From IMG/VR virus record IMGVR_UViG_3300033143_006101, positions 62,001-126,000 of that record: a stretch of DNA of 64,000 bases; one strand, 5' to 3'. A model generated the notes under the pieces. That model did not search any database. It had not been told where the DNA came from and saw only the letters and a program-made list of their open reading frames with translations. How positions within the stretch are numbered: the first letter of the stretch is position 1; the number at the start of each line of letters is the position of its first letter. This document shows, piece after piece, positions 4,133 to 26,288 of this stretch. The position numbers and the translations under genes were made by a program.

Positions 4133-7100
4133 ATGGGTAAAACAACAATTATACCAAAACAAGATGCTGCCATAAGCTATACAGGTAATTGGACAGGACT
4201 GGCAGGTGGTAATGAAATTCAGATGGAAGATGCTGGTAATGATTCCAATGCATCAGGAACTTTTGGTGTTACTGCAAGACAATTAGCAGACGGAGACGGT
4301 GCTGGAGCAGTAGGTCTTATAGAAGGTATGGATTACAATTATGATGCAAGATTAGATGATCCCGCAGGTAATGGTGTAGATATATATGATACTTCTACGG
4401 GAGGTGCTCTCGCAGAAAATAAATATTTAAGAATAGTAGAAAATGGAGCTAATATCGCTGAAACTGCTGGTGGCGGTACAAAGAGAAGCCAAATCCTTGA
4501 AGTTTATGCTAAAGATTTAACTCAATTAATTTCTCCTCCTTATGATCAAGTATATGTAGATCCTGCAAAAGGAAAATTTGTTTTACCTAGACCAAACTAT
4601 TATACTAAATGCACTGATTGGACTAATATCACTTCTCCAGAAATAGGTCAAGCTATTAAAACTTCAAATGCAGGAGAATTTCTAGATCCAACCATAAAAT
4701 TTGGAAATGGTATATGGGGTAGTTTTTCAGATGTTACTAAATATATTGATTTAGATCTATCAGATAACTTTTCAAGTTTTGATACTGGTACTTTATCGTT
4801 ATGGTATCAGCATTATCAATCCAATGCTTCTGTAGATATTATGTTTAGTGATACTTCAGTAAATAATTATGCCAAAATTTATAATTATGGTGGAAATAGA
4901 TATAAATTATTAAATCTTAGTGCGGTTGGTGGTACGAATTCAGGTGCTGCAATGGATAATACTAACATTCCAGCTGCTGCAATTACCACCCATCTTTATG
5001 TTGTATGGGATACAGGAAATGGATTAGATAGTAGTAAATCTGTAAGAGTATTTGTAGATGGAGTTGAAGTAATAAGTACAACTGATGCTAGTTTAACTTT
5101 TTCAAAAGTTAGAATTAGAATATACACAGTATCTGCAGCTTCTTCTGCAGCATATTCTAATATAAAAACATGGGAGGAGGTCGTTTCTGAAGATCCTTCT
5201 TGGGAATACAATGGAGGATCAGGAAGAGAAGATGCAATGCATTATATTTATGGTTCAGACAATGATTATAAACCAAAATTAGATAGTAGTACTAATCCTG
5301 ATAGTGGAGTAGGATATTATTATATACAAGAAGGAGTAGACACAACCGTTTCGCTTCCTCAACCTACTGGAACTGCTATAACAGAAGAAAGACAACTTGA
5401 AGATATTTCTGATTACTCTGCTGGTGTAGGATACTTTGGCCCCAATCATAGGTTATTTAAAAATGATTATTCTGCTTTGGTGGAAAACATTGACTACTAT
5501 ATAGATGAAGCATTAGATGGTACAGGTGTTCATGCAATTCTTATATGGGATGTTGGGGATAGTGGAGCTCTTGCCGGAGGTAGTGGTAGGTATATGAGAG
5601 TAGTTCATGATGGAACTAATGTTTCTACTGGAATAGGATTAAAACCTGTTGCAAAAGACACGTCTATTTCAGGAAATTTTCCTCCGGCAGATGCGTTAAC
5701 TGGAACAAAAGAATGTTGGATAGATATATCCAGGGGTAAAATAGTATTACCAAGACCTAACTATTGGAATAAATGTGAAGTAGAAAATGCTTTAAGATTG
5801 AACACCGCTGAAATATACGATGAAACTCCAGAAACATCTATTACAGATAATACTACTTATCCTGTAGTTACAGGTAAATTTTATAATGGAATTAGATTGT
5901 CTATAAATGCTGGTGATACTGATTTTTTCTATCCCTTTGGTTCTTCTTATGCAGGTTGTGAAAAAGGGACTATGTCATTTTGGATGTACTTTAATAATAA
6001 AGCAGCTAATAGAAAACCGGCAATTAGAATATATTTAAAAGAATCTACTACTGATACTTTTATAATATATCAATGGACTGGTACAGCATGGAATAATAAA
6101 ATAGTAATAAATGGTGTAAACCAGGATATTAATACTACTAATTGGGAAACAGACTATCATCATTTTTATATTGTTTGGGATATTGCTGGTGGTTTATCTG
6201 GTGGGAAAACAATTAGAGTCTTTTTTGACGGGGTAGAAGATTTAAGTACTACAAATAATTTTACAGTCGAAGATTTATTCATGACTTTTGCCAATACATT
6301 AGGAACAGATGGTGCTTGTGTTTATTTTGATAACCTTAAAATATGGAAAGATCAAATAGTGTCTGAAGATCCATCTTGGGAATACAATAGTGGTACAGGA
6401 AGAGAAAATGCTCTTCATGAAATATACGGATCTGGAAGTGACTATGAACCAAAGTTAACTTCCGGAGACAGTGGTGGCGTGGGATATTATTTCCAACAAG
6501 GTGGTGATGAGGAAATCCAACTTGAAGATGCTTCTGATATAGAAAATGGAATAGTATATACTGGAGGAACACATAATCTTGCTAAAGATGATTATAATCC
6601 TTTAGTAGAAGATACGGATTTTTATTATGATGAAGAACTTGATGGATCAGGTACACATTCTATAGATATTATAGATACTAATATTGCTGGTACTTTAGAT
6701 AGTGGTAAATATTTAAGAATAGTTCATAACGGACAAAATGTAATTACTCCTACTGGATTAAATCTACTTCCTAGAGCTACACAAATGATTTCAAATTATG
6801 TTACTCCTCCAGAAGGTGAAGTATGGGTTGATCCTTTAAGAGGAAAAATTATATTACCAAGACCTAAATATTGGAGTAAATGTGAGAGTTTGCTTAATGT
6901 TACAACAGATGCAGAAATATATGATGAAGCTAATATACCAATACTTTCAGCTGGTGGTGGAGAAGCGTGGACTATCAGTTCCCCGGGAAAATGGAATAAT
7001 ATGCTATATAGACCAAGTTCTATACAAGCTTATTATTTACATCCTTTTGGAACAGGTTCTTCTCTTAAGGAACAAGGAACACTATCTTTTTGGATAAAAC

Positions 7101-7585
7101 ACGGTGGCTCACAACCACTCACATATTTTTCACCAACCGGAAATACTACTGGATTTGGGTTTTTATGTCATTATATTGGAGGGTTTGATTGGTCATCGGC
7201 TTGGGTGCATGTATATTGTGTTTGGGATAAAAATAAATCTTTGGATAGTGGAACTAAATGGTTAAGATGTTGGAGAAATGGTGTGGAATGGACTCCTACA
7301 ACCTCACAAACTTGGGCTGAAGGTAGCCCACCAGTACCAGAATTCTATGTATTGGCGGGTGGATTATATGGAACAAATAGACTCGATAATATTAAAATAT
7401 GGGATCATATAGTAGCTGAAGATCCTGCATGGGAATACAATGGAGGATCAGGAAGAGAAGACGCACTCCATTATATGTATGGAACTTCAAATGGATATAA
7501 ACCAGCATTAACTTCTGGATTTAATGGCGGTGTAGGATACTTTAAACCCGATACTGCAGGAAGTTATATAAAATGGACAATATAG
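4133..7585 (+). CDS. Tail fibre/receptor-binding-like protein with three ~370-aa repeats, each with a LamG/concanavalin-A-like domain
   Basis: Three copies each of KGKxxLPRPxY, GT(L/M)S(L/F)W, H(L/F/V)Y(V/I/C)VWD, (V/I/L)R(V/C)xx(D/N)GVE, N(I/L)K(T/I)W and EDPxWEYNxGxGRE. Confidence 0.7.
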   Translation: MGKTTIIPKQDAAISYTGNWTGLAGGNEIQMEDAGNDSNASGTFGVTARQLADGDGAGAVGLIEGMDYNYDARLDDPAGNGVDIYDTSTGGALAENKYLRIVENGANIAETAGGGTKRSQILEVYAKDLTQLISPPYDQVYVDPAKGKFVLPRPNYYTKCTDWTNITSPEIGQAIKTSNAGEFLDPTIKFGNGIWGSFSDVTKYIDLDLSDNFSSFDTGTLSLWYQHYQSNASVDIMFSDTSVNNYAKIYNYGGNRYKLLNLSAVGGTNSGAAMDNTNIPAAAITTHLYVVWDTGNGLDSSKSVRVFVDGVEVISTTDASLTFSKVRIRIYTVSAASSAAYSNIKTWEEVVSEDPSWEYNGGSGREDAMHYIYGSDNDYKPKLDSSTNPDSGVGYYYIQEGVDTTVSLPQPTGTAITEERQLEDISDYSAGVGYFGPNHRLFKNDYSALVENIDYYIDEALDGTGVHAILIWDVGDSGALAGGSGRYMRVVHDGTNVSTGIGLKPVAKDTSISGNFPPADALTGTKECWIDISRGKIVLPRPNYWNKCEVENALRLNTAEIYDETPETSITDNTTYPVVTGKFYNGIRLSINAGDTDFFYPFGSSYAGCEKGTMSFWMYFNNKAANRKPAIRIYLKESTTDTFIIYQWTGTAWNNKIVINGVNQDINTTNWETDYHHFYIVWDIAGGLSGGKTIRVFFDGVEDLSTTNNFTVEDLFMTFANTLGTDGACVYFDNLKIWKDQIVSEDPSWEYNSGTGRENALHEIYGSGSDYEPKLTSGDSGGVGYYFQQGGDEEIQLEDASDIENGIVYTGGTHNLAKDDYNPLVEDTDFYYDEELDGSGTHSIDIIDTNIAGTLDSGKYLRIVHNGQNVITPTGLNLLPRATQMISNYVTPPEGEVWVDPLRGKIILPRPKYWSKCESLLNVTTDAEIYDEANIPILSAGGGEAWTISSPGKWNNMLYRPSSIQAYYLHPFGTGSSLKEQGTLSFWIKHGGSQPLTYFSPTGNTTGFGFLCHYIGGFDWSSAWVHVYCVWDKNKSLDSGTKWLRCWRNGVEWTPTTSQTWAEGSPPVPEFYVLAGGLYGTNRLDNIKIWDHIVAEDPAWEYNGGSGREDALHYMYGTSNGYKPALTSGFNGGVGYFKPDTAGSYIKWTI

Positions 7586-7595
7586 GAGATAAATT

Positions 7596-8372
7596 ATGGC
7601 AAGAGGAATAAAATTTTCCGGAATACAATTTAGAAAAGATGATGAATCCGGAATAGCACAAATAAGCATATTTAACTCAACAAGAGGAACTTATGTTGTT
7701 CAAGACGATTTAGTGGATTTATATACAGCAGATAAAGTTGCTGGTAATGGAGAATATGAAAAATTTACCTATTGGACATTATTAGATCCGAGTACAGATA
7801 CTTATATTGTAACCGCACAACATTCTGGAGCACATAATCCTAATTCAGGTGGATCATCCTGGCCAATACAAGTTATACAATACTTTATGACAGAAGAATT
7901 AAATGACGGAGAAATAGAAGTAATAGCTACTACATGGCATACTGATCATTTAGGAGATACATATACTTATACTTTTACTCCAAATACTAGACACGAAACA
8001 TATAACATTCAATATTTTAATGGGGATTCGAGTACAGGTAAATTCACACTTAACGATCCACATCATGCATCACAACCATATTTGTTTAGTAAAGACAGTG
8101 GAACTACCTGGTTCTATCCAACATCATATCTTGTATCTTGGGGAACTAATGTTCCTTTTTATAATGATAAACGTATAGATGCTAATGGACAATTTAGTAT
8201 TGTTTTTGACGATCCTCCAGATGTTGGAATTGGAAATGTATTAATTAAATATGCTCCAAAAGCAAATAAAATGATAATAGAAAGAACTATAAAACAACCA
8301 AATGATGGTGTAGATTTTTATGATTATAAACAGAATGTTAGATTACTTGATGATGGAGTAGAACACGTATAG
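7596..8372 (+). CDS. Putative tail/structural protein
   Basis: 258-aa beta-rich ORF with SD (taggag), contiguous with the tail genes. Confidence 0.5.
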   Translation: MARGIKFSGIQFRKDDESGIAQISIFNSTRGTYVVQDDLVDLYTADKVAGNGEYEKFTYWTLLDPSTDTYIVTAQHSGAHNPNSGGSSWPIQVIQYFMTEELNDGEIEVIATTWHTDHLGDTYTYTFTPNTRHETYNIQYFNGDSSTGKFTLNDPHHASQPYLFSKDSGTTWFYPTSYLVSWGTNVPFYNDKRIDANGQFSIVFDDPPDVGIGNVLIKYAPKANKMIIERTIKQPNDGVDFYDYKQNVRLLDDGVEHV

Positions 8373-8383
8373 GAGATAATATT

Positions 8384-8575
8384 ATGTATGAAATAACATC
8401 TACCGGAACAATAGATGCCGAAGCTATTCTAGAAGCTACTAATGATCTTACAACACTAATTAAATTAGAATTTATTACTGATGAGGATACTATATTAAAA
8501 CAGGATAAAATAATAAAACTTCTTTATGAAAGAGTAACGGAATTAGAATCAAGAATAGCAAAAATAGGAGGATAA
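8384..8575 (+). CDS. Small coiled-coil protein
   Basis: SD aggag; C-terminal LYERVTELESRIAKI heptads. Confidence 0.5.
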   Translation: MYEITSTGTIDAEAILEATNDLTTLIKLEFITDEDTILKQDKIIKLLYERVTELESRIAKIGG

Positions 8576-8576
8576 T

Positions 8577-8891
8577 ATGAGTATTACATTAGAACAATTG
8601 GTAGAACATTCTAGAAAAAAAAGAATATTCGCCAAAAAATTTGGTGTTTCTATGAGAGTAGTACAAAAATGTATAGATGAGTTGGCTTCTTTTGGTTTAA
8701 CTACTAATGGAGAATTTGATGTAGAAGATGTAATAGAATATGCCAGTGATCCAGAAAATATATTATATAACTTAATTGATTGGACAGCTGACACAGACAC
8801 ACAAAAAGCACAGATAAATGTGATACTTCAAAATATTTCATTACTAATATCTTCTTCAGATAATAAAGCATTTAATATAAAACTAAAATAA
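8577..8891 (+). CDS. Hypothetical protein
   Basis: SD aggagg; tightly packed in the operon. Confidence 0.55.
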   Translation: MSITLEQLVEHSRKKRIFAKKFGVSMRVVQKCIDELASFGLTTNGEFDVEDVIEYASDPENILYNLIDWTADTDTQKAQINVILQNISLLISSSDNKAFNIKLK

Positions 8892-8903
8892 AAGGATGAT
8901 ACT

Positions 8904-9293
8904 ATGGTAGCAGAGATAGATAAATTTTTTGATAAAATTAGTGATATAAATATCACAGACATGACAACATCAGAAATATTAAATATAGCAACGAGTAACG
9001 GATCTCCCTCACTTGTTGTTGCTATCGATGAAGAAGCAATGTTTATAACAGGAGAGATTTCTGAGAAAGATAAAGAATCATTAGAAAATCATTTAAAAAC
9101 TAATAAATATCATAAGATTGATTTAAACATACATAAAATGTCTTTATCAAGCAGTATCTACTTATTCAAAAAGTTTGGAAAAAAAGACATTACAATTTTA
9201 ATGGGAGTACTAGCTAAAAAAAATGATCGTAACAGAATAAAATTAATGGATATGCAATCACAATTTCTACTACAACGACAATCAGGCTGGTAA
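8904..9293 (+). CDS. Hypothetical protein
   Basis: SD aagga; tightly packed in the operon. Confidence 0.55.
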   Translation: MVAEIDKFFDKISDINITDMTTSEILNIATSNGSPSLVVAIDEEAMFITGEISEKDKESLENHLKTNKYHKIDLNIHKMSLSSSIYLFKKFGKKDITILMGVLAKKNDRNRIKLMDMQSQFLLQRQSGW

Positions 9294-9295
9294 AT

Positions 9296-9694
9296 ATGGA
9301 TAATATTGATGTAACTAAATTACTTGATCTAACAGAAAGAAGTGTAGATGCATGGGCTAAATTTCAAAACAGACTAGAAGATCTTTTAAAATCTACTGAA
9401 TGGCAAGCTTCAGAACTTAAAGAACTTAATAAACTATTAACAACTAAACCATGTATTACTGAAACAATACCTTATGCTACACTGGAAGCTAATATAAAAC
9501 AAGAATGGGAAAAACGTATTAAAGAACATGCAGATATTGTTACAGCTATTAAAGCATTAACAGAAAGTAATAGTAAAGTAACAGAAACAAATACTAAAAG
9601 AATAGAGCAAGCTAAAGATCTAACCTTCTGGCTTAAAATATTAATAGCTGTACTTACTATAGGAGGATTATTACTTGGGATATTTGTGGTTTAA
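9296..9694 (+). CDS. Coiled-coil protein with C-terminal transmembrane helix (holin/antiholin-like)
   Basis: C-terminal FWLKILIAVLTIGGLLLGIFVV; directly upstream of the lysin. Confidence 0.5.
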   Translation: MDNIDVTKLLDLTERSVDAWAKFQNRLEDLLKSTEWQASELKELNKLLTTKPCITETIPYATLEANIKQEWEKRIKEHADIVTAIKALTESNSKVTETNTKRIEQAKDLTFWLKILIAVLTIGGLLLGIFVV

Positions 9695-9706
9695 AGGAGA
9701 ACTGAA

Positions 9707-10426
9707 ATGTTTGGGTCAATAAAAATAGCAAATAATTTTATTCAATCTATATTAGGTTATAAAAAAGAGGCATTTGCACCAATAGAAGCAATACCAGAAG
9801 CCCCTGCTATTAATATATTCAAATCAACTCTTTATTACTTCTTAGAAAATTACTATAAAAAAATGGGAGTACCCTGGGAAGAAATAAATATGTTTGGTAT
9901 TCAAAATGAAAATAAGATGAATGAAGATGTTATAAATGATTGGATCTGTATAGCAGATAATAAAACCAAAATCATTTACAAATTTAGAGGAAGTACGAAT
10001 CCCGGAATTTATTATACTAATCACTTGATTAATTCTAAACTTAAAGGTGTTGCTCATATAGCCAATGGCTACCATCCTAAAGTATATGTAGTAGGTTTTC
10101 ATAAAGGAAAATATGAAGCTATGGTACAACGCGGAGCTAAGATTAGAATATGGAGAGATGTAGATAAAGATTTCAAGAAATCTACGAAAGATATTGTTTG
10201 TAAGGGCTGGTTTGGGACAAATATACATAAGATGTCGGATTGGAAAGTACTTACCCGTATAGGAAGATACAGTGCTGGATGCCAAATAATTGCGGATCCA
10301 AAGGAATTCAGACAATTTATGAGTATAGTGAAAGCAAGTAATCATTATAAAAGATATAGGGGAGCAGCACGTTTCAGTTATATGATTGTCCCTGTTAATT
10401 CAATTCCGCAAGAATTTCTGATATAG
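9707..10426 (+). CDS. Putative endolysin, L,D-transpeptidase (YkuD)-like Cys peptidase
   Basis: NIH-x14-SAGCQ resembles the H..S-x-G-C catalytic motif; flanked by membrane-protein genes. Confidence 0.65.
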   Translation: MFGSIKIANNFIQSILGYKKEAFAPIEAIPEAPAINIFKSTLYYFLENYYKKMGVPWEEINMFGIQNENKMNEDVINDWICIADNKTKIIYKFRGSTNPGIYYTNHLINSKLKGVAHIANGYHPKVYVVGFHKGKYEAMVQRGAKIRIWRDVDKDFKKSTKDIVCKGWFGTNIHKMSDWKVLTRIGRYSAGCQIIADPKEFRQFMSIVKASNHYKRYRGAARFSYMIVPVNSIPQEFLI

Positions 10427-10436
10427 GAGAAATAAG

Positions 10437-10874
10437 ATGAATAATGTAGAAGGAATACTTTTAACTGATAAACAATTAAAGGGACTCGAAAAATTAGGGG
10501 AAGACACTAAAAGAAAACCATCGTGGATAGCCAGGCTATTTGACTGGATAGATTATAATATATTAAGTCGCACAACAAAAATATGGGTATACTGCTTAGA
10601 GATAGTAGGAATTATTGCCCTTTTTATGGTGTTAGATGAATTTAAAACAGGGTTAGAATTGATACGTACCGCTAAAGATGCATTAGAATTACAAAAAGCT
10701 AAAGTATATATGGATGCAGTAATTACCTCAGCCCCCTCTTTGGCTACTATGATAGCTGTTATTGGAGGAGCATTACCTGGTTTGATAGGAGCATTAAGGA
10801 CATTGAAAAAGAAATGGATCAATGGATATGCAAATGGCAATGGGCACGCAAATAAGGAAGAGGATACTGCATAA
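10437..10874 (+). CDS. Putative holin
   Basis: Two hydrophobic segments and a charged C-terminus, immediately after the lysin. Confidence 0.5.
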   Translation: MNNVEGILLTDKQLKGLEKLGEDTKRKPSWIARLFDWIDYNILSRTTKIWVYCLEIVGIIALFMVLDEFKTGLELIRTAKDALELQKAKVYMDAVITSAPSLATMIAVIGGALPGLIGALRTLKKKWINGYANGNGHANKEEDTA

Positions 10875-10920
10875 TTAAATTGTCCTTCCAAATTAATCTT
10901 CAATATAACTTCAAATTTAT

Positions 10921-10963
10921 TGTATCTCCCAGTATGGGAATACTGGGAGATACATATTTTTTT
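10921..10963 (+). terminator. Intrinsic terminator after the lysis cassette
   Basis: Perfect 15-bp stem tgtatctcccagtat/atactgggagataca with ggga loop, followed by a T-run. Confidence 0.75.
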
Positions 10964-10976
10964 AAAGGAGGGAAGG

Positions 10977-11297
10977 ATGAAATTTGATTTAAATAAAGAC
11001 ATGCAACCCTGGATAGTCCTGATTAATAATAACTTAAAATGGTCTATCGCTCTCATAATTAGAATCGGTATGATGGTTATATTACTTTTCGCTATTTTAA
11101 TATTACTAAGGTGGACCGGATTAGTAACAAACTTTAATAATAAGATAAAAGTAGAAGCTGACAAACCTGTAGTAAAATCAAAACCCTCTACCCCCACACA
11201 CGAAAACGATATACAACATATAAATAATCTTAAAAAGTTAATAAAAGAAAGGTTAAATGAATCAAAGGTTAAGGGGAAAGAAAATGAAGATAAATAA
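10977..11297 (+). CDS. Membrane protein
   Basis: SD aaggaggg, start at MKFDL; one long hydrophobic segment. Confidence 0.55.
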   Translation: MKFDLNKDMQPWIVLINNNLKWSIALIIRIGMMVILLFAILILLRWTGLVTNFNNKIKVEADKPVVKSKPSTPTHENDIQHINNLKKLIKERLNESKVKGKENEDK

Positions 11298-11865
11298 CGT
11301 CTTAATTCTTATCCTAATGCTATTTGTTGGAACCAGTATAGTAGGAGAGGTGATTCTTACTGAAAAAGAAGCAGAGGAGCTCTACGAGCGTCTGGATAAG
11401 GATGAGCACATCATTAAATGGCAAGCTAAACGTTGGAATGGTTTAGTGAATACAAACCCAAAAATTACCTATAAGATAGTAGATGGTAATGTCATCATTC
11501 AAACAGTGGAATTTCCCATAAAAAACGATAAACCCTTGATATACGAAGTAAAAATGAAAATAACACAAAAAGATGAACCGAGAATGCTCTTCCCATTCAC
11601 CTTGAGTTTATGTGGTATCTTAGAATCTGGGGTAATGAGCCGTGTAGATGCTAAATTAGGGGTCCAATTGTTCAATTTTCCCTCAGTTGGCCTAAGATAT
11701 TTTAAAAGCCTTGGGATACATTGCCTTATAGGAGCCCAATCCTCCGGTGTTTCTCTCTCCTGGAGGGTAACAGATTACCTTAAAAACACAAGAATTCACT
11801 TATATTCGGGAATGACGTATGAAATGAAGAAAAGCTTTGGAATAGGGGTTTCACTTAATTTTTAA
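11284..11865 (+). CDS. Secreted/outer-membrane-like protein
   Basis: Signal peptide MKINNVLILILMLFVG; C-terminal alternating beta strands ending in ...GVSLNF. Confidence 0.5.
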   Translation: MKINNVLILILMLFVGTSIVGEVILTEKEAEELYERLDKDEHIIKWQAKRWNGLVNTNPKITYKIVDGNVIIQTVEFPIKNDKPLIYEVKMKITQKDEPRMLFPFTLSLCGILESGVMSRVDAKLGVQLFNFPSVGLRYFKSLGIHCLIGAQSSGVSLSWRVTDYLKNTRIHLYSGMTYEMKKSFGIGVSLNF

Positions 11866-12508
11866 GAGGTGATTATGGAGAAAAAAATCAAAAAACTGGT
11901 CAAAAAGTACAACCCTTTTCACATAAAAAGGGGGGAAACTAAGATAAAATGGCTAATTACACCCAAAATAGGCAAAAATGGGCGAAAATCAAGGGATTTT
12001 GAGGTTTTAGGGCAAGATCTGGCAGAAAATTCGAAGTTACGCCTCGCAGTTAAAACTCCTATTTCAGAGGATGTTAATGTAAACTTCAACTTTAAAGGAG
12101 ACTCTAAAGATAACAATATAGAGGTAAAATTTACTAAAAACTTCTAATTTTTTTGTAAAAAATCGGACAACTCGCATAATATAGTATTTATGTCCCTTAG
12201 ATTATAGGAAGCTATGGAAACACCTTTAATACATATTTTAACAGATAGCTGGTTATTCGTATTTGGTATTTTACCAAATGTATTTAATGTAATATACCCG
12301 GAAATCTATTTTATAGCCACTAAAAGACAGTTTGAGCTAAAAAATAGAGTCCTAAAGTGGGTTGTTTGTTATTTTAGCGTGATAGTACCTTTCAGCTGGG
12401 TATTACTATATGCTATGTTAGTAGTATTGAATAAAATAGTAAAAACAGGAGAAGATGTCGCAAAGTTAGCGACATCTATAAATATAGAATTAGATAAAGA
12501 GGACATAC

Positions 12509-12709
12509 TTGATGGAAGTAGACTTTAAATGCAATGATTGTGGTAATGTGACTACTTATTGGAAATCATACAAAAAGAGGATGCCTAAAACTGTACAATG
12601 TGATCAGTGCAAAAGTCGAAACACCAGAAGGATCTATGGAATAGGCCATATTAGTGTTTCTGCAGGAAAATGTGGGAATGCCAGTAATGGTTACACATCC
12701 AAAAAGTAA
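12509..12709 (+). CDS. FmdB-family zinc-ribbon protein
   Basis: FKCNDCG...VQCDQCKSRNTRRI. Confidence 0.7.
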   Translation: MMEVDFKCNDCGNVTTYWKSYKKRMPKTVQCDQCKSRNTRRIYGIGHISVSAGKCGNASNGYTSKK

Positions 12710-12719
12710 GGAGAAGATT

Positions 12720-13319
12720 ATGTTTAAACATATCAAGTCATTTGTAATGAACAAAAGAGAAGGGGTATCAAATTACTTTAGAAAAAAACAAGATGCAGAG
12801 CTGGCAAGAGCAGAAGGTTTTGCATCCGGGACAACGGTAGCCTCTACAGAGTTCACATCAAAAATAAAAAACCTAACACATAGTATAGCAGAGTTAACAG
12901 AAGAAAATATAGTAATGGAGAAAAAATTAAGAACAGTTTATGATGAAAGAGTAGATGTATTGGATACTCGATATACGAAGAAATGTGATGATTGCATGCG
13001 AGCAACGGATAGAGAAAGGAAACGGTTAAGAAAAAATCAAAATGCTATTTTGGATTTAATCCAAAATTTTAATATTGTATATATGAAGCTTTTTAAGCAT
13101 GCGAGTTTTATTATGGATGAGCATGATAATATAATAAAATCTTCAGGAAGAGTGAAGGCATCTCGAGATACTCTAACAGTTATCAGAAAAGAAGCCAATT
13201 CATTAATACAGACTGCCCTCCCCCTGTTAGGAATAGACGTGACGGAAAAGATGGAGAATAAATTACTTCAACATGATGAAATTATCAATGTGGAAAAACA
13301 AACAGACAAGGTACAATAA
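12720..13319 (+). CDS. Hypothetical coiled-coil protein
   Basis: SD aaggag before ATG 12720; long helical K/E-rich stretches. Confidence 0.55.
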   Translation: MFKHIKSFVMNKREGVSNYFRKKQDAELARAEGFASGTTVASTEFTSKIKNLTHSIAELTEENIVMEKKLRTVYDERVDVLDTRYTKKCDDCMRATDRERKRLRKNQNAILDLIQNFNIVYMKLFKHASFIMDEHDNIIKSSGRVKASRDTLTVIRKEANSLIQTALPLLGIDVTEKMENKLLQHDEIINVEKQTDKVQ

Positions 13320-13370
13320 CTTAAAGTTTTTCTAGAAAATACTATCTTTTAGTCAGATGGTATTTTAACA

Positions 13371-14150
13371 ATGCTAGAAAAAATATATAGTTTAAAAAAG
13401 GCTGAGGCTCTGTTACGAAGGTATATACTGGCTAATTCTGATATCAATCAAGAAGTAGCCAGTATGCTTCGTCAACTTGCAAGGAATCAAACTCATACTT
13501 GGAAAGCCACAGCGTATAGTCGAGCAGCAGATAGTATATCAAAATGGGAAACTCCTCTTTCTGAAATGGAGAGTTTTAAAGAAATTCCTGGAGTAGGAGA
13601 GGATATAGATCAAGAGATCAGAGAGTATCTCGAGACAGGTAAAATTCAAAAGCTTGAGATATTAAAAAAGGAAGAAGTAAGCCGTAGACCATTCACTGCA
13701 ATGGAAGTCATAGACAAGACAAAAGCTCTGTTTGATATGGCTGATAAAGTTGGCTTGATCTATGAAATTACAGGTTCCATTAGACGAAAAGAAGAACGAG
13801 TCAGAGACTTAGATATTATTATCCTCATTAAGCAGATGAAGCAATGGAATACTATTGTAGATGCTATAGCAGAGGACATACATAGAAAAGGTGAACAAGA
13901 GATTGATTTTGAAATCAATGGGGTAGAAATAAACTTAAGAGCTGTCAATGAAGATGAGCTAAGTGCGGGAGTACTATATTTCACCGGTCCCAGCTCCTAT
14001 AGTATTTGGATGAGACAAATAGCCAAAGAAAAAGGATATAAATTAAATCGTAGAGGACTGTTCGACGCACAAGAAAATCAGATAGCTAAAACAGAAGAAG
14101 ACATCTTTAAGAAACTTGATATCCCTTGGACACCACCAGAGAAGAGGTAA
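13371..14150 (+). CDS. polX: X-family DNA polymerase-like protein, compact and with atypical catalytic residues
   Basis: 8-kDa/HhH domain (AYSRAA..IPGVGEDI..I.EYLETGK), GSIRR, RDLDII, YFTG, MRQIAKEKGYKLN, ..IF..L..PW.PPE.R. No PHP domain. Confidence 0.88.
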   Translation: MLEKIYSLKKAEALLRRYILANSDINQEVASMLRQLARNQTHTWKATAYSRAADSISKWETPLSEMESFKEIPGVGEDIDQEIREYLETGKIQKLEILKKEEVSRRPFTAMEVIDKTKALFDMADKVGLIYEITGSIRRKEERVRDLDIIILIKQMKQWNTIVDAIAEDIHRKGEQEIDFEINGVEINLRAVNEDELSAGVLYFTGPSSYSIWMRQIAKEKGYKLNRRGLFDAQENQIAKTEEDIFKKLDIPWTPPEKR

Positions 14151-15953: not shown

Positions 15954-17060
15954 ATGGCACTAGAAGAAAGAATAAAAGAATTAGTTGATTATCTTCATAT
16001 TCAACGAAAGAAGTATTATGAGGGGGAGATAGAAATTTCTGATGAAGAATTTAATGCTTTAGAAGAAGAATTGAGATCTCTAGATTCTGAGAACGAATAT
16101 TTCAAAGAAGTTGGATCTGAACCGGATACGGATAAAATAAAACATTCCTTTCCTATGCGAAGTATCCAAAAAAAGAAATCCCCAGAGAAAGTAACCAGCT
16201 GGCTTAGAAGTAGAATGGGAGATGCTATAGATGTTATAATTCAACCTAAAATAGATGGTGTATCTTTAACAAACCGATATGAGGAAAGAGAGCTTATATA
16301 TAGTGCTACCCGAGGAGATGGGGAATATGGAAAAGAAATTACAGAAGTAATCCAGCTGATAGAAGAAGTTCCTAAAGCAACATATACTATGGATCCAATA
16401 GAAATAAGGGGTGAAGTATATTTAGAAAAAGATGCTGAATATTCAAAGCAAAAGGCTCAAGAAGGTAAAGAATCACTTAGAAATATAGCGGCTGGAATAC
16501 TAAATAGAAAGCAAAATATTGAGGATGCGGTGCATCTTAACTTTGTAGCATATGATATAATAGGAGTGCCCTTTCCCAGTGAATTAGATAAATTAGAATA
16601 TTTACAAGCAATAGTACCTAATCCAATAATATATCAGAGAGCCCAGAGTGTAGAAGAAGTTGCTGCATTATGGGAACAATATAATGAAGAACGAGAGATT
16701 CTCGCTTATGAAATAGACGGGATTGTTATAAAGATAAATGATGGTAAACTAAGAGAGCAATATCAAGGAACTAATCCTCATCATTGGGGATATGAAATAT
16801 CCTGGAAATTTGAAGCAAGAAAAGAGGTTACAACACTAACAGATATCATATGGACAATTGGGGCAAAAGGCAACGAATCTCCTGTAGCCATATTCGAACC
16901 AGTTAGTATTAGTGGCAGAAATATAGAAAAAGCCACGTTACATAACCAAAAAAGAATAAATGAATTACAGCTGGAAATTGGCGATATTATAGAAGTAGGC
17001 TTGGCCGGGGATGTTATACCTAAAGTATATTCTAATCTCAGCAAAAACATAACTATTTAA
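15954..17060 (+). CDS. ligA: NAD+-dependent DNA ligase, truncated after the OB domain
   Basis: Ia domain (KYY...ISDEEF), MRSIQK, QPKIDG, EIRGEV, LRNIAAG, EIDGIVIK, WKF, ATLHN, AGDVIPKV. The stop follows directly, so there is no Zn finger, HhH or BRCT. Confidence 0.92.
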   Translation: MALEERIKELVDYLHIQRKKYYEGEIEISDEEFNALEEELRSLDSENEYFKEVGSEPDTDKIKHSFPMRSIQKKKSPEKVTSWLRSRMGDAIDVIIQPKIDGVSLTNRYEERELIYSATRGDGEYGKEITEVIQLIEEVPKATYTMDPIEIRGEVYLEKDAEYSKQKAQEGKESLRNIAAGILNRKQNIEDAVHLNFVAYDIIGVPFPSELDKLEYLQAIVPNPIIYQRAQSVEEVAALWEQYNEEREILAYEIDGIVIKINDGKLREQYQGTNPHHWGYEISWKFEARKEVTTLTDIIWTIGAKGNESPVAIFEPVSISGRNIEKATLHNQKRINELQLEIGDIIEVGLAGDVIPKVYSNLSKNITI

Positions 17061-22020: not shown

Positions 22021-22500
22021 TTATTTTTCTCCGTTTTCACTAGCAATAAGATGATTTAATTCTTGTTCTAATGTTGGTAATATCATTCTAATTTGTTTAC
22101 AACCTGTTTCACAAAATTCGAGTTTTTTAATCCAAATATCCCAATTATCCGAAAGAAGCTTAATAAAATCTTTATCACTCCCCCTTTCAGTATATAATTT
22201 TAAAAATCTCTCTTTTTGATCACGATCTGGATAAACCAAATAAAAGAAAATACAATTTTCTTTTAAAACATCCCTCACTTCCTTGTGTGTAGATACAAAA
22301 ATAAATTCATATTTTCCAATGTTTTCCTTAATGTGTTTTATATAATTATTAGGGAAATCAGGATCTCTGACTTTTTTCCCATCTGGTTTTCTTATCCAAC
22401 TAAACCAACTTGAATCAGAATCAAGTGTTGTTTTTGGATATTTTTTATGATAATAACTTTTTCCTATTCCAGGAAAACCTGATATAATTCTTGTTTTCAT
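22021..22500 (-). CDS. P-loop NTPase/kinase-like protein
   Basis: IISGFPGIGKS Walker A; LDSDS. Confidence 0.7.
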   Translation of the reverse strand: MKTRIISGFPGIGKSYYHKKYPKTTLDSDSSWFSWIRKPDGKKVRDPDFPNNYIKHIKENIGKYEFIFVSTHKEVRDVLKENCIFFYLVYPDRDQKERFLKLYTERGSDKDFIKLLSDNWDIWIKKLEFCETGCKQIRMILPTLEQELNHLIASENGEK

Positions 22501-23684: not shown

Positions 23685-24392
23685 TCATAATTGTTTTCCT
23701 AATTCTTCTACTTTTTCTTTTATGTTATCAGCTTTATAAATAGCACTTCCCACTATAGCATGCCATCTATCACCAGCAGCTTTACCAGCTTCAGTTATAT
23801 CACCACCTTGAGTAATGAGACCTGGGGAATAATAAGTAACTGGTCCAATACTTTCACTATTAGGCTCTTCTACTTCTATTACATTTTCTCTGTAATGTTT
23901 TATCCTATCGGGTTTATTTCCAGGTAATACAAAATCTGTTACACCCATAAGCATTGCGGTTTTATACATCTCATCTGGAGCGGTTTCTTTAATGTAAGAA
24001 AAAAATCCATCATGTGTCATTTCTCCACCAACAATAACATGAAGTCCATTACTCACACAGGCCCTAATCCATGATGTTTGAGTTTGTATACCAGCAAAAG
24101 GAAATAGTATAACAGCATCTACACCAGCATCTTTACAAACTTTTGCAAACTTTTCTCCCATAGCTGGAATATCATTGCCCGCTTTCTGGTGGTCGTATAT
24201 AATAGGTTTATTTGTAACTTTTCTAATAAATTCAGTAATAATTGCTAATCCATAAAACAAAGCAAGATTTAAACCTATTTTATACCCCCCAATTACTTCT
24301 AAACCACAAGTTGCTTTTACTATGTTTTCTAATTCTCCTAAAGTTGGTACATCACAAGCTACAATAATACTTTTGTTTCTTTTAATTAACAT
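23685..24392 (-). CDS. pyrF: Orotidine-5'-phosphate decarboxylase
   Basis: IIVACDV, GYKIG, YDHQKAGNDIP, GVDAVI, SPGLITQGG, AIVGSAIY. Confidence 0.85.
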   Translation of the reverse strand: MLIKRNKSIIVACDVPTLGELENIVKATCGLEVIGGYKIGLNLALFYGLAIITEFIRKVTNKPIIYDHQKAGNDIPAMGEKFAKVCKDAGVDAVILFPFAGIQTQTSWIRACVSNGLHVIVGGEMTHDGFFSYIKETAPDEMYKTAMLMGVTDFVLPGNKPDRIKHYRENVIEVEEPNSESIGPVTYYSPGLITQGGDITEAGKAAGDRWHAIVGSAIYKADNIKEKVEELGKQL

Positions 24393-24393
24393 T

Positions 24394-25158
24394 TTAATTC
24401 TCCTTTAATAATTTTTTTACAAATAATGGTCTGGTAAATAAAATGGAACCTAAAGCTATTTCTGTTACCCCCATTTCTTCTAATCTATGAACATCATCTA
24501 AACAAGTTATAGAAGAACCGGCTACACTAATCCCTTCTTTTTTTAATTCTTCTATATGACTAGCTATAAAATGCCAATTATATTTTTTAGCCCATTTACC
24601 TGATATAGCACCTATATTTATAAATCCTGTAGCTATTGAAGCTGGTACTGAATTAAGTGTTATTCTTTTTACTGATGTATTCCATTCTAATGTACTATTA
24701 GCTGCAAATAGATATGGATCCATCATCCAACTTAACTTTAAAGATAAAGGGAAAGGTGAATCTGGAATCCTTTTATTCTCGTGAGATATGATATTAGGAC
24801 AAGATAAATTAAGTTCTACCATAGGAAAATTAAAACCATATTTGTGCATAGTTGATATCATTGTTCTAAGTTCACTGTCATTTCCAGCTAAAGATGGAAT
24901 GAGTCTTTGTTTAATTTCTCTATCAAGTCCTAAATATTTCTGACACCACCAATGGAATCCATTATTGTGTAATCCTATTTTATTCCACATAGATTTTGCA
25001 AAAGGTATAGGAAAAAAATTATATGGTTTACCTCTTTTTGGTTTATAAGTAATTGTCTTAGCAACAAAAGGAAGTTCAGGAAAACCACTTATTAATTTAT
25101 GCCACCAGTAACCCTCTCCATAAAAACCCATTGTTGCTGAACTGTAAAAATATTTCAT
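24394..25158 (-). CDS. pyrD: Dihydroorotate dehydrogenase (class 1-like, compact)
   Basis: AKTIT, NKIGLHNNG, ELNLSCPN, LKLS, TLNS, GAISGK, IALGS; lies between pyrE and pyrF. Confidence 0.8.
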   Translation of the reverse strand: MKYFYSSATMGFYGEGYWWHKLISGFPELPFVAKTITYKPKRGKPYNFFPIPFAKSMWNKIGLHNNGFHWWCQKYLGLDREIKQRLIPSLAGNDSELRTMISTMHKYGFNFPMVELNLSCPNIISHENKRIPDSPFPLSLKLSWMMDPYLFAANSTLEWNTSVKRITLNSVPASIATGFINIGAISGKWAKKYNWHFIASHIEELKKEGISVAGSSITCLDDVHRLEEMGVTEIALGSILFTRPLFVKKLLKEN

Positions 25159-25172
25159 TTATTTCTCCTTAT

Positions 25173-25790
25173 TTAACAATTATATGTTGTAAAATAATCA
25201 GCAGTAAAGATACTTGTAACCATAGATGGATATTCACCATCTGGTTTTCCTTTAAGTAATGCATTTTCGATATTTAATTTACCATCGAATTCTTGTCTAT
25301 CAATAAGCACTATACAATGTATAGGTTCAAGACCGGCTTCTATCATTTTCTCTATCGCTGTAACTGTAGAACCACCTGTAGTGATAACATCTTCTACAAC
25401 TATAACCTTATCACCTTTTTCATAATTACCTTCTATCCATGCCTGTGTCCCATGACCTTTAGGTTTCTTACGAACTATAATGGGATTGAACCCTGTTTCT
25501 TTTACTACAGATAAAGCTAACGGATAAGCACCTGTTTCAATACCACCAATAGAATAATAATTTCCACCTACTACTATATTACCAGCTACTCTTTCTATAT
25601 ATTCTTTTTCAATAAACAAATCAAACAATACATTTCCTATACAACCATATCCTACAGGATCAAGCATAGTAGGTTTACAGTTAAAATATAATGGACTTTC
25701 TTTACCTGACTTTAATTTAAACGGTTCGTCAGGTCGATACAAAAAACTTTTCTCATAAAGTATTTTAAGTAACATGTCTTTACTATTCAT
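25173..25790 (-). CDS. pyrE: Orotate phosphoribosyltransferase
   Basis: FKLKSGKESPLYFNCK, VRKKPKGHGT, VIVVEDVITTGGS (PRPP loop), LIDRQE. Confidence 0.93.
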   Translation of the reverse strand: MNSKDMLLKILYEKSFLYRPDEPFKLKSGKESPLYFNCKPTMLDPVGYGCIGNVLFDLFIEKEYIERVAGNIVVGGNYYSIGGIETGAYPLALSVVKETGFNPIIVRKKPKGHGTQAWIEGNYEKGDKVIVVEDVITTGGSTVTAIEKMIEAGLEPIHCIVLIDRQEFDGKLNIENALLKGKPDGEYPSMVTSIFTADYFTTYNC

Positions 25791-26288
25791 TTTTAATCTC
25801 CTTAAATTTATTTATTATTTCCCCACTTCCTCTATCTCAAGAATCTCTTCTTCTTCACTTTCTTCTATATTACAATCACGATGTTTTCTTTTCTTCGCCA
25901 TAAGCACAGCTCCTCTACACATCCCAGTTATGGCTGAAAATGTTGACGTGGCTACAAATACCATCTCTTGAAGATCTGTGCCCTTGCCCATTTCTTCAAT
26001 TGCTTGATGACATATTTTATTAATCTCTGCTAAAACATCTTTCTTCATTTTATACCTCCTTTTTATTTTTATGTGCCTCATTCATTTGTTTTAAAAAATC
26101 CTGGACATCAACTAAACATCCAGCATTAAAAATAGTAACTGGTGCAGGAAAAAAACAATATTGTCTCCAAGCCGGATACCATTGTATAACACCTAACCTA
26201 TCATCACTTTTATTATTCCTACATTCCCAAGCTGTTGTCTTTGGTTTATTCTCGATTAATTCAAAATAAATATATTTATATTCTGTTT

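What the first reader, a model, noticed from the sequence alone, without database searches (positions are those of the whole stretch)
23685..25790. Phage-encoded pyrE-pyrD-pyrF cluster: last three steps of de novo UMP synthesis
Seen: three adjacent, tightly packed genes with catalytic motifs (DHODH Lys in AKT and Cys in SCPN, PRPP loop, OMPDC), surrounded by phage-type small ORFs. No pyrB/C or pyrK is in the window. Known: these convert dihydroorotate to UMP. Inference: an auxiliary metabolic module boosting pyrimidine supply for an AT-rich genome, possibly in a host with limited synthesis.
Basis: partly seen in the sequence, partly recalled or inferred. Interest (0 to 1): 0.6.

Follow-up and report, generated by a model that had tools for sequence, protein, structure and literature searches.

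The report
Phage pyrE–mini-pyrD–pyrF pyrimidine gene cluster
A complete 253-kb jumbo bacteriophage carries three tightly packed genes for the last three steps of UMP synthesis, drawn from three different ancestries. One of them is an unusually small, virus-specific dihydroorotate-dehydrogenase-like enzyme whose activity has not been shown.

Summary
Three minus-strand ORFs fill 23685-25790 exactly, each preceded by an AAGGAG ribosome-binding site:
- pyrE, 25173-25790.
- A 254-aa DHODH-like gene, 24394-25158.
- pyrF, 23685-24392.

The window lies in a complete 252,876-bp tailed phage genome with terminal repeats. The cluster's composition is typical of that genome, so it is not a chimera. The whole genome has no pyrB, pyrC, pyrK or PRPP synthetase.

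- **PyrE** is of a bacterial type. PyrE is already known as a cyanophage gene.
- **PyrF** is 50-57% identical to the PyrF of DPANN archaea, where it sits in full pyrBIDKCEF operons. Here the otherwise invariant phosphate-gripping Arg is Ser216, which may weaken the enzyme.
- **"PyrD"** is not canonical. It belongs to a small, apparently virus-specific compact family (about 34 clusters, 220-270 aa). The family keeps every class-1 catalytic and FMN motif but lacks about 50 residues and any PyrK partner. In other viral contigs it again sits beside canonical pyrE or pyrF.
- **The host** looks bacterial. The "host with limited synthesis" idea remains untested.

Verdict: an auxiliary dihydroorotate-to-UMP module and a new variant of a known kind. 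Interest is moderate.

The parts
25173..25790 (-). pyrE: orotate phosphoribosyltransferase homologue, 205 aa, bacterial type
   Evidence: PF00156 scores 39.3 bits against a cut-off of 26.3. TIGR00336 scores 99.2 against 106.8, just under. The best PDB matches are OPRTs, aligned across the KKPKGHG loop and the VIVVEDVITTGGS PRPP motif. It is 45-50% identical to Syntrophales/Deltaproteobacteria PyrE and to phage-like contigs, and 28-34% identical to DPANN operon PyrE. It matches phrog_32468.
24394..25158 (-). Compact DHODH-like gene ('mini-PyrD'), 254 aa, from a virus-associated family
   Evidence: PF01180 scores 32.4 against 27, over residues 32-123 only. The PRK07259 equivalog scores 42 against 269. 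The family profile matches the L. lactis DHODB PyrD subunit 1ep1_A over positions 11-242 at E 6e-11. The AF2 model has pLDDT 85.9, and all top Foldseek hits are DHODHs at TM 0.70. Invariant in the family are K34, N59, N65, S119-C120-P121-N122, K141, N169 and G183/S186/G187.
23685..24392 (-). pyrF: orotidine-5'-phosphate decarboxylase homologue, 235 aa, DPANN-archaeal subtype
   Evidence: PF00215 scores 54.4 against 27. PRK13813 scores 77 against 208. It is 50-57% identical to PyrF proteins that sit in pyrB-I-D-K-C-E-F operons of DPANN archaea. The AF2 model has pLDDT 91.9 and matches M. thermautotrophicus OMPDC at TM 0.82/0.88 with rmsd 1.9 A.
23745..23747 (-). Codon AGT = Ser216 of PyrF, at the position of the conserved phosphate-gripper Arg
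   Evidence: All 19 aligned relatives have Arg here, including the phage-like P0013-P0016. The position aligns with R203 of MtOMPDC. The codon was read directly.
25798..25803 (-). Shine-Dalgarno AAGGAG, 7 nt before the pyrE ATG
   Evidence: Read from the sequence.
25165..25170 (-). Shine-Dalgarno AAGGAG, 6 nt before the mini-pyrD ATG, in the 14-nt gap after the pyrE stop
   Evidence: Read from the sequence.
24400..24405 (-). Shine-Dalgarno AAGGAG before the pyrF ATG, lying inside the 3' end of mini-pyrD
   Evidence: Read from the sequence. The mini-pyrD stop codon TAA is at 24394-24396 and the pyrF ATG at 24390-24392.

Best explanation
The three genes form one co-translated auxiliary metabolic module of a jumbo tailed bacteriophage. 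During infection it converts host-made dihydroorotate into UMP.

- The compact flavoenzyme oxidises dihydroorotate to orotate. It uses FMN with Cys120 as the catalytic base. It has no PyrK subunit, so it presumably passes electrons to fumarate, O2 or a host acceptor, as class 1A enzymes do at the same site.
- PyrE joins orotate to host PRPP to give OMP.
- PyrF decarboxylates OMP to UMP.
- The phage's own class II ribonucleotide reductase and thymidylate-synthase-like protein can then channel the product towards dTTP for its 67% A+T genome.

Shown here: homology, folds, conserved catalytic motifs, operon-like packing, the phage context, and recurrence of the compact enzyme beside canonical pyrE or pyrF in other viral contigs.

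Inferred: the substrate of the compact enzyme, its electron acceptor, the activity of PyrF given Ser216, and the benefit to the phage.
For: **Packing and expression signals.** The gaps are 14 nt and 1 nt, and each ATG has an AAGGAG site.

**PyrF.** It is orthologous at 50-57% identity to the PyrF of complete DPANN pyr operons. The subfamily motif DHQKAG[TN]DI is shared. The OMPDC fold is matched at rmsd 1.9 A.

**PyrE.** The OPRT loop and PRPP motif align to solved OPRTs. TIGR00336 scores 99 bits. In the tree it groups with bacterial-type PyrE.

**Compact PyrD.** All DHODH class-1 FMN and orotate-binding motifs are invariant across the family. Every sequence hit and every top fold hit in the PDB is a DHODH.

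**Independent association.** In L004 a 41%-identical compact PyrD sits in a row with a PyrE and a PyrF that both pass their curated cut-offs (148 against 106.8, and 207 against 193). That PyrF is of a different lineage from the one here. In L141 a compact PyrD lies 3.4 kb from a PyrE that also passes (121 against 106.8). One Logan contig has an Amidohydro_1 gene two genes away.

**Genome context.** The genome is complete, and the cluster's composition is typical of it. The phage also encodes an RNR and a ThyA-like protein.
Against: - All three proteins score below the curated equivalog cut-offs.
- The compact PyrD lacks about 50 residues of canonical DHODH. These include the N-terminal hairpin, the helix after the active-site loop, and the hairpin before GGLSG.
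- The compact PyrD looks closest to class 1B, which normally needs PyrK, and the genome has no PyrK.
- In several viral contigs the compact PyrD stands alone, with no pyrE or pyrF within +/-6 kb or in the held record.
- PyrF has Ser where the phosphate-gripper Arg is otherwise invariant. The equivalent R235A change in yeast OMPDC lowers kcat/Km 19,000-fold (PMC12874384).
- No expression or read data could be obtained.
Confidence: 0.65

Rival explanations
1. The compact DHODH-like protein is a flavin oxidoreductase of the DHODH/DPD superfamily that acts on some substrate other than dihydroorotate. In that case only PyrE and PyrF act in UMP synthesis, using host or scavenged orotate.
For: It scores 42 bits against a 269-bit equivalog cut-off. 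It is about 50 residues shorter than any characterised DHODH. It often occurs in viral contigs without pyrE or pyrF nearby, for example next to AdoMet decarboxylase in L002. Related contigs L011 and L012 carry pyrE-pyrF with no pyrD between them.
Against: The motif is SCPN, as in DHODHs. The Lys, the NxxGL motif that binds the orotate carboxylate, and the three Asn residues are invariant. The gene is wedged between pyrE and pyrF here. It also sits beside canonical pyrE and pyrF of other lineages in L004 and L141.
Confidence: 0.17
2. The module is partly decayed in this phage. PyrF is crippled by Arg->Ser at the phosphate gripper, so the cluster no longer delivers useful flux to UMP. It may stop at OMP or orotate.
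For: Ser216 replaces an Arg found in 19 of 19 aligned relatives. It differs from AGA/AGG by a single base. The equivalent mutation costs 5.6 kcal/mol in yeast OMPDC.
Against: All three ORFs are intact with strong ribosome-binding sites. The other catalytic residues of PyrF are kept. Even a 10^4-fold weaker OMPDC retains measurable activity, and host PyrF could finish the step. The change could also be an assembly error. The identical protein is on record on only 2 contigs, and no reads could be laid.
Confidence: 0.1
3. The module makes a non-canonical pyrimidine nucleotide for DNA or RNA modification rather than UMP.
For: All three proteins are divergent from the curated models. The phage also has an unusual 601-aa thymidylate-synthase-like protein.
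Against: PyrF and PyrE are ordinary members of subfamilies that sit in cellular pyr operons or are annotated as cellular PyrE. No base-modifying gene lies next to the cluster.
Confidence: 0.05
4. The cluster is cellular DNA wrongly joined to a phage contig, that is, an assembly chimera.
For: The nearest relatives of PyrF are cellular.
Against: The genome is closed by direct terminal repeats and rated 100% complete. The cluster's GC is 30-33%. Its tetranucleotide correlation to the genome is 0.938, at the 52nd percentile of genome windows. Phage-type ORFs flank it on the same strand. The best cellular identity is only about 55%.
Confidence: 0.03

Closest known systems
Cyanophage pyrE auxiliary metabolic gene (Prochlorococcus phages P-SSM2, P-SSM5, P-SSM7)
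   Same: It is a phage-encoded orotate phosphoribosyltransferase held to boost nucleotide supply. It is 31-37% identical over about 80% of the protein. The literature treats it as a cyanophage host gene (PMC9983427, PMC4022391).
   Different: Those phages are annotated with pyrE only. No INPHARED phage matched this PyrF, and only contaminant-like fragments matched the PyrD-like protein. Here pyrE is flanked by two further pathway genes.
PyrF of DPANN archaeal pyrB-pyrI-pyrD-pyrK-pyrC-pyrE-pyrF operons (e.g. archaeon GW2011_AR10, Woesearchaeota, Iainarchaeum)
   Same: It is 50-57% identical over the full length and shares the DHQKAG[TN]DI, GGEMTH and TQGG motifs.
   Different: The phage copy and four metagenomic phage-like copies fall outside the 97%-supported clade of 82 rows from the 80 genome loci and P0020/P0025. 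The phage copy has Ser216 instead of Arg. The gene next to it is not the archaeal 303-aa PyrD plus PyrK. The phage PyrE is only 28-34% identical to the PyrE of those operons.
Class 1 dihydroorotate dehydrogenases (L. lactis DHODB PyrD subunit 1EP1/5UE9; class 1A DHODA 1DOR)
   Same: It has the (beta/alpha)8 FMN barrel. It keeps the Cys base in SCPN, the Lys, the three Asn residues, and the GGLSG and G-x-S/T phosphate-binding motifs.
   Different: It has 254 residues rather than about 306-311. It is 16-21% identical to these enzymes. No PyrK is present. TM-scores are 0.70, and it fails the curated equivalog cut-offs by a wide margin.
DHODH-like genes on giant-virus and other IMG/VR contigs
   Same: They are virus-associated PF01180 proteins (loci L036, L040, L043, L049).
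   Different: They are only 22-26% identical and of canonical length. They do not belong to the compact family.

Membership tests
Orotate phosphoribosyltransferase (PyrE, TIGR00336) | Type I PRT fold with a PRPP-binding acidic motif followed by TTGG | tested here: met
   PF00156 scores 39.3 against 26.3. VIVVEDVITTGGS aligns to the same motif of solved OPRTs.
Orotate phosphoribosyltransferase (PyrE, TIGR00336) | Score above the curated equivalog cut-off | tested here: not met
   It scores 99.2 bits against 106.8, a narrow miss. Its nearest phage-like relative, the L011 PyrE, passes at 119.5.
Orotate phosphoribosyltransferase (PyrE, TIGR00336) | Flexible catalytic loop (K-x-x-K-x-H-G) and N-terminal orotate/PRPP-binding K-S-G...S-P-x-Y segment | tested here: met
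   RKKPKGHG and FKLKSGKESPLYFN align to OPRT chains 3qw4_B and 3m3h_A.
Orotate phosphoribosyltransferase (PyrE, TIGR00336) | Catalyses orotate + PRPP -> OMP | not testable with these tools
   This needs an enzyme assay or complementation.
Class 1 dihydroorotate dehydrogenase (PyrD) | Pfam DHO_dh domain above the gathering score | tested here: met
   It scores 32.4 against 27, but the match covers only residues 32-123.
Class 1 dihydroorotate dehydrogenase (PyrD) | Score above the curated equivalog or subfamily cut-offs | tested here: not met
   PRK07259 scores 42 against 269, and TIGR01037 scores 30 against 270. The same holds for other compact-family members.
Class 1 dihydroorotate dehydrogenase (PyrD) | Catalytic Cys base in SCPN, plus FMN/orotate-binding Lys, Asn residues and GGLSG | tested here: met
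   K34, N59, N65, C120, N122, K141, N169 and G183/S186/G187 are invariant in 10 family members. They align to the DHODB residues.
Class 1 dihydroorotate dehydrogenase (PyrD) | (beta/alpha)8 barrel resembling solved DHODHs | tested here: met
   The model has pLDDT 85.9. The top 49 Foldseek hits are all DHODHs, at TMq 0.63-0.73.
Class 1 dihydroorotate dehydrogenase (PyrD) | Full-length architecture of about 300-311 aa | tested here: not met
   It has 254 aa. Profile positions 11-242 span residues 25-283 of 1ep1_A, with three internal deletions and shortened termini.
Class 1 dihydroorotate dehydrogenase (PyrD) | Class 1B partner PyrK (FAD, 2Fe-2S) encoded alongside | tested here: not met
   PF10418 found nothing in the genome. 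tblastn with an archaeal PyrK also found nothing.
Class 1 dihydroorotate dehydrogenase (PyrD) | Oxidises dihydroorotate to orotate | not testable with these tools
   The only support is indirect: it recurs next to canonical pyrE and pyrF.
Orotidine-5'-phosphate decarboxylase (PyrF) | Pfam OMPdecase domain over the full length | tested here: met
   It scores 54.4 against 27, covering residues 9-230.
Orotidine-5'-phosphate decarboxylase (PyrF) | Score above the curated equivalog cut-offs | tested here: not met
   PRK13813 scores 77 against 208, and TIGR01740 scores 33 against 92.3.
Orotidine-5'-phosphate decarboxylase (PyrF) | Orthology to pyrF genes located in pyrimidine operons | tested here: met
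   It is 53-55% identical to genes at the end of pyrB-I-D-K-C-E-F operons.
Orotidine-5'-phosphate decarboxylase (PyrF) | Catalytic Asp / Lys / Asp-x-Lys-x-x-Asp array | tested here: met
   D14, K38, D67, K70 and D74 are present. The spacing is D-x-x-K-x-x-x-D, which is conserved in the whole DPANN-type subfamily.
Orotidine-5'-phosphate decarboxylase (PyrF) | Phosphodianion-gripper Arg (R203 in MtOMPDC, R235 in yeast) | tested here: not met
   It is Ser216 here and Arg in 19 of 19 aligned relatives.
Orotidine-5'-phosphate decarboxylase (PyrF) | OMPDC fold | tested here: met
   The model has pLDDT 91.9 and matches MtOMPDC at TM 0.82/0.88 with rmsd 1.9 A.

The most novel reading that the evidence does not exclude
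The 254-aa protein represents a new, virus-specific minimal class of dihydroorotate dehydrogenase. It is a stripped-down class-1 barrel that works without PyrK and without a quinone. This would let phages uncouple orotate synthesis from the host's respiratory or NAD-linked DHODH. Together with a bacterial-type PyrE and a DPANN-type PyrF, it would form the first described phage-assembled three-step UMP module.
Probability: 0.4. Interest if true: 0.65.

Novelty: new variant of a known kind. Interest (0 to 1): 0.5.

Why it matters
Phage genes for nucleotide supply are well known: ribonucleotide reductase, thymidylate synthase and cyanophage pyrE. Three consecutive de novo pyrimidine steps on one phage have not, as far as I could find, been described.

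If the module is active, it shows that a jumbo phage can take over the redox-dependent step and the two committed steps of UMP synthesis. It also shows that such a module can be built from genes of bacterial, archaeal-type and virus-specific origin.

The compact DHODH-like family would be the smallest known DHODH scaffold. That makes it useful for asking which parts of the enzyme are dispensable and which electron acceptors a bare PyrD barrel can use.

The natural Arg->Ser change in PyrF is a ready-made test of the 'phosphate gripper' model outside the laboratory.

Tried and rejected
- **Sequencing runs.** A search with the 2.1-kb cluster listed no runs, so no read-level check of codon 216 and no expression data were possible.
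- **Metagenome contigs.** An exact-pattern scan around codon 216 found no other copy.
- **IMG/VR scan with the PyrF alignment.** It found no other viral contig with the DPANN-type PyrF. A single-sequence scan found only a 36%-identical OMPdecase on four viral contigs.
- **Phage lineage and host.** Searches of cultured phages with TerL and PolA gave only remote hits at 23-39% identity, partly driven by inteins. The phage lineage and host genus stay unresolved.
- **Archaeal (DPANN) virus.** This was considered because of PyrF and rejected as unlikely. The genome encodes bacterial-type RecA, DnaB, PolA and an NAD-dependent ligase. It uses AAGGAG ribosome-binding sites. Its tRNA-Tyr is 86 nt long, which I take to indicate the bacterial long-variable-arm type.
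- **Co-transfer of pyrE and pyrF from one DPANN operon.** Rejected. The phage PyrE is 28-34% identical to DPANN PyrE, against 45-50% to bacterial-type PyrE. The tree separates them by a 95% branch.
- **Chimera.** Rejected on composition and genome closure.
- **Other genes sought and not found.** pyrB, pyrC, PyrK, a class II aaRS-like gene and PRPP synthetase were all absent.
- **Promoter and terminator scans.** They gave no more sites than shuffled sequence.
- **Complex prediction.** None was run, because the report claims no protein-protein binding.
- **Other checks.** No alternative genetic code was used.
Full report
**1. What is in the sequence**

Between 23685 and 25790 the minus strand carries three ORFs that fill the interval exactly.
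- 25173-25790: 205 aa.
- 24394-25158: 254 aa.
- 23685-24392: 235 aa.

They are separated by 14 nt and 1 nt. Each ATG is preceded by AAGGAG at 6-7 nt, and the site for the third gene lies inside the end of the second gene. Simple promoter and terminator scans gave nothing above shuffled sequence. The packing alone suggests one transcription and translation unit.

All three pass Pfam gathering scores: Pribosyltran 39.3, DHO_dh 32.4 (residues 32-123 only) and OMPdecase 54.4. All three fall below NCBIfam's curated equivalog cut-offs:
- pyrE TIGR00336: 99.2 against 106.8.
- DHODH PRK07259: 42 against 269.
- OMPDC PRK13813: 77 against 208.

**2. The genome around it**

The window is bases 62001-126000 of a 252,876-bp virus record with direct terminal repeats, rated complete. 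GC content is 33%.

The record is a tailed phage. It encodes:
- a tail sheath, a baseplate wedge protein and a large terminase;
- a family A DNA polymerase, a DnaB helicase and a bacterial-type RecA;
- a class II ribonucleotide reductase and a thymidylate-synthase-like protein;
- and, within the window, PolX, an NAD-dependent ligase and an ATP-dependent ligase.

It has 25 tRNA genes covering all 20 amino acids. Together with the AAGGAG sites, this points to a bacterial host. Cultured phages are only remotely related, so the host genus is unknown.

The cluster's GC is 30-33%. Its tetranucleotide profile correlates with the genome at r = 0.938, the 52nd percentile of genome windows. The flanks are small phage-type ORFs. 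A chimera is therefore very unlikely.

The whole genome has no Amidohydro_1 (pyrC), OTCace_N (pyrB), DHODB_Fe-S_bind (PyrK) or PRPP synthetase. tblastn with archaeal PyrB, PyrC and PyrK also finds nothing.

**3. PyrF**

The protein has more than 2,300 homologues. The best are 50-57% identical and mostly from DPANN archaea. In three examined genomes the homologue is the last gene of a pyrimidine operon, next to pyrE. The order is pyrB-pyrI-pyrD-pyrK-pyrC-pyrE-pyrF in the AR10-type loci and in a Woesearchaeota contig (L005/L006, L008). A 236-kb contig (L007) has a similar set but no pyrI or pyrD call, and its pyrK-like gene lies upstream of pyrB.

A scan of one genome per prokaryotic species found at least 567 relatives. 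The top 80 are almost all DPANN lineages.

The subfamily has a characteristic D-H-Q-K-A-G-[TN]-D-I motif instead of the usual D-x-K-x-x-D. The phage protein shares it. The AlphaFold model (pLDDT 91.9) superposes on Methanothermobacter OMPDC at rmsd 1.9 A, TM 0.82/0.88. This is a genuine OMPDC subfamily that the curated models under-score.

In a quick maximum-likelihood tree, the phage protein groups with four short metagenomic sequences. One of these is L011, where it again follows a pyrE on a phage-like contig. The group falls outside a 97%-supported clade of 82 rows, made up of the 80 genome loci plus P0020 and P0025. DPANN-type PyrF is thus the nearest cellular kin, but the donor and the direction of transfer are not resolved.

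No other IMG/VR contig carries this subtype. No INPHARED phage matches it, and PHROGs has no family for it.

One anomaly stands out. Residue 216 is Ser (codon AGT, window 23745-23747). All 19 aligned relatives have Arg there, including the phage-like ones. The position aligns with R203 of MtOMPDC, the phosphodianion gripper. The equivalent R235A change in yeast OMPDC lowers kcat/Km 19,000-fold (PMC12874384). Whether this is a real and tolerated change, a sign of decay, or an assembly error could not be settled. No runs were listed and no second copy was found.

**4. PyrE**

The best PDB matches are OPRTs. The KKPKGHG loop and the VIVVEDVITTGGS PRPP motif align to them.

Identity to relatives:
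- 50% to the closest protein, on a phage-like contig that carries pyrE alone (L009).
- About 45% to named cellular hits, which are Syntrophales/Deltaproteobacteria PyrE.
- 31-37% to cyanophage PyrE.
- 28-34% to DPANN operon PyrE.

In a tree it groups with the L011, L009 and P0137 sequences, inside a 95%-supported bacterial-type clade and away from DPANN PyrE. Its branch is long, so the exact placement is unsure. PyrE and PyrF therefore have different ancestries, and a small viral pyrE-pyrF pairing predates this phage.

**5. The 'PyrD'**

This is the unusual part. Only ten close relatives exist among 5.8 billion protein clusters. An exhaustive profile search finds 34 clusters at E <= 1e-30, the full-length ones mostly 220-270 aa. 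Below them comes a tail of 270-340-aa DHODH-like proteins that also fail the curated cut-offs.

Wherever context could be read, the compact proteins lie on phage-like contigs.

The family alignment shows the following residues as invariant: K34 (VAKT), N59 and N65 (WNKIGLHN), S119-C120-P121-N122, K141, N169, and G183/S186/G187 (the GGLSG motif); the AGCS and GLGS motifs are conserved. A profile of the family aligns over nearly its whole length with the PyrD subunit of L. lactis DHODB (1ep1_A, E 6e-11). These residues fall on that enzyme's catalytic Cys and its FMN and orotate ligands. The alignment also shows what is missing: the N-terminal hairpin, a helix after the active-site loop, the hairpin before GGLSG, and the C-terminal end.

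The model (pLDDT 85.9) hits only DHODHs among the listed Foldseek matches, at TM about 0.70.

**6. Independent support for a role in orotate synthesis**

This comes from gene neighbourhoods.
- In L004, a compact PyrD 41% identical to this one is followed by an AsnRS-core-only paralogue. Then come a PyrE and a bacterial-type PyrF that both pass their curated cut-offs (148 against 106.8, and 207 against 193).
- In L141, a PyrE that passes (121 against 106.8) lies 3.4 kb away.
- In a Logan contig, an Amidohydro_1 gene of dihydroorotase size lies two genes away.
- In G001, a 180-kb relative, an OMPdecase start lies at the contig end.

Against this, several contigs carry the compact gene alone.

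**7. Mechanism proposed**

Host PyrB and PyrC supply dihydroorotate. The compact flavoenzyme oxidises it, with Cys120 as the base. Electrons leave FMN to fumarate, O2 or a host carrier.
- Class 1A enzymes re-oxidise with fumarate and need no second subunit.
- Class 1B enzymes need PyrK.
- Class 2 enzymes need respiratory quinone (PMC8097209).

PyrE then uses host PRPP to make OMP, and PyrF makes UMP.

The benefit is inferred, not shown. The module would relieve the redox-coupled DHODH step and the two committed steps while the phage replicates a 253-kb, 67% A+T genome. The phage's own RNR and thymidylate-synthase-like enzymes lie downstream of UMP.

The phage depends on host dihydroorotate and PRPP. 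This does not fit a host that lacks the pathway.

**8. Comparison with what is known, and novelty**

Cyanophage pyrE is established (PMC9983427, PMC4022391). Full-text searches found no description of a phage pyrE-pyrD-pyrF cluster. They found only a virome survey mentioning viral contigs that encode ATCase and DHODH (PMC13526804).

The finding is a new variant of a known kind, namely nucleotide-supply auxiliary genes. It contains one potentially new enzyme form, the compact DHODH. Interest is moderate at 0.5. The biology is plausible rather than surprising. The mosaic origin, the mini-DHODH family and the natural gripper-Arg loss are each concrete and testable.

**9. Limits**

- No activity, expression or host data were available.
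- The trees are quick searches with long branches and no proper outgroup.
- Only part of the genome's 402 ORFs was scanned against family libraries.

Noticed in passing
window 23745-23747 (minus): PyrF codon 216 is AGT (Ser). Every aligned relative has the phosphate-gripper Arg at this position. The difference from AGA/AGG is a single base.
   Followed up: partly
L004:4323-7162: A related viral contig has this gene order: compact PyrD, then a 321-aa AsnRS-catalytic-core-only paralogue, then a canonical PyrE, then a canonical bacterial-type PyrF. The paralogue scores 153 bits to asnS and 52 bits to asparagine synthetase A. A tRNA-synthetase-like or AsnA-like enzyme inside a pyrimidine cluster is unexplained.
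   Followed up: partly
whole genome G000 (e.g. 4735-14000, 237230-252078): The phage carries 25 tRNA genes covering all 20 amino acids. The tRNA-Tyr is 86 nt long, which I take to indicate a long variable arm of the bacterial type.
   Followed up: no
G000:137366-140407 (-) and G000:197489-200482 (-): The large terminase (1013 aa) and the class II ribonucleotide reductase (997 aa) both appear to be interrupted by inteins. The evidence is Hint/intein and LAGLIDADG matches.
   Followed up: no
G000:599-2404 (+): A 601-aa protein has only a weak thymidylate-synthase-like region (E about 1e-8). It could be a dUMP/dCMP-modifying enzyme rather than a plain ThyA.
   Followed up: no
window 13371-14150, 15954-17060, 54099-55319 (+): The window also encodes a PolX (pol beta-like) protein, an NAD-dependent DNA ligase and an ATP-dependent DNA ligase. 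A phage carrying two ligases of different cofactor types is unusual.
   Followed up: no
L016:204-6059 and L016:6133-9585 (window about 1-4059 and 4133-7585, +): Two very large ORFs (1951 and 1150 aa) have no Pfam match at E <= 1e-4.
   Followed up: no
L002/L003:7580-8843: In a relative on contigs of 97-187 kb, the compact PyrD-like gene sits directly after an S-adenosylmethionine decarboxylase gene (AdoMet_dc), with no pyrE or pyrF nearby.
   Followed up: no
window 22021-22500 (-): A 159-aa P-loop protein (GFPGIGKS) lies about 1.2 kb downstream of pyrF. It matches phrog_4182 (unknown function, E 5e-47) and no Pfam family. It could be a nucleotide kinase, but this was not tested.
   Followed up: partly
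L082, L090, L093, L099 (genome contigs): Four contigs binned as Clostridia, Gammaproteobacteria or Saccharibacteria carry DPANN-type PyrF and form one 96%-supported clade. They are either mis-binned archaeal contigs or real bacterial acquisitions.
   Followed up: no
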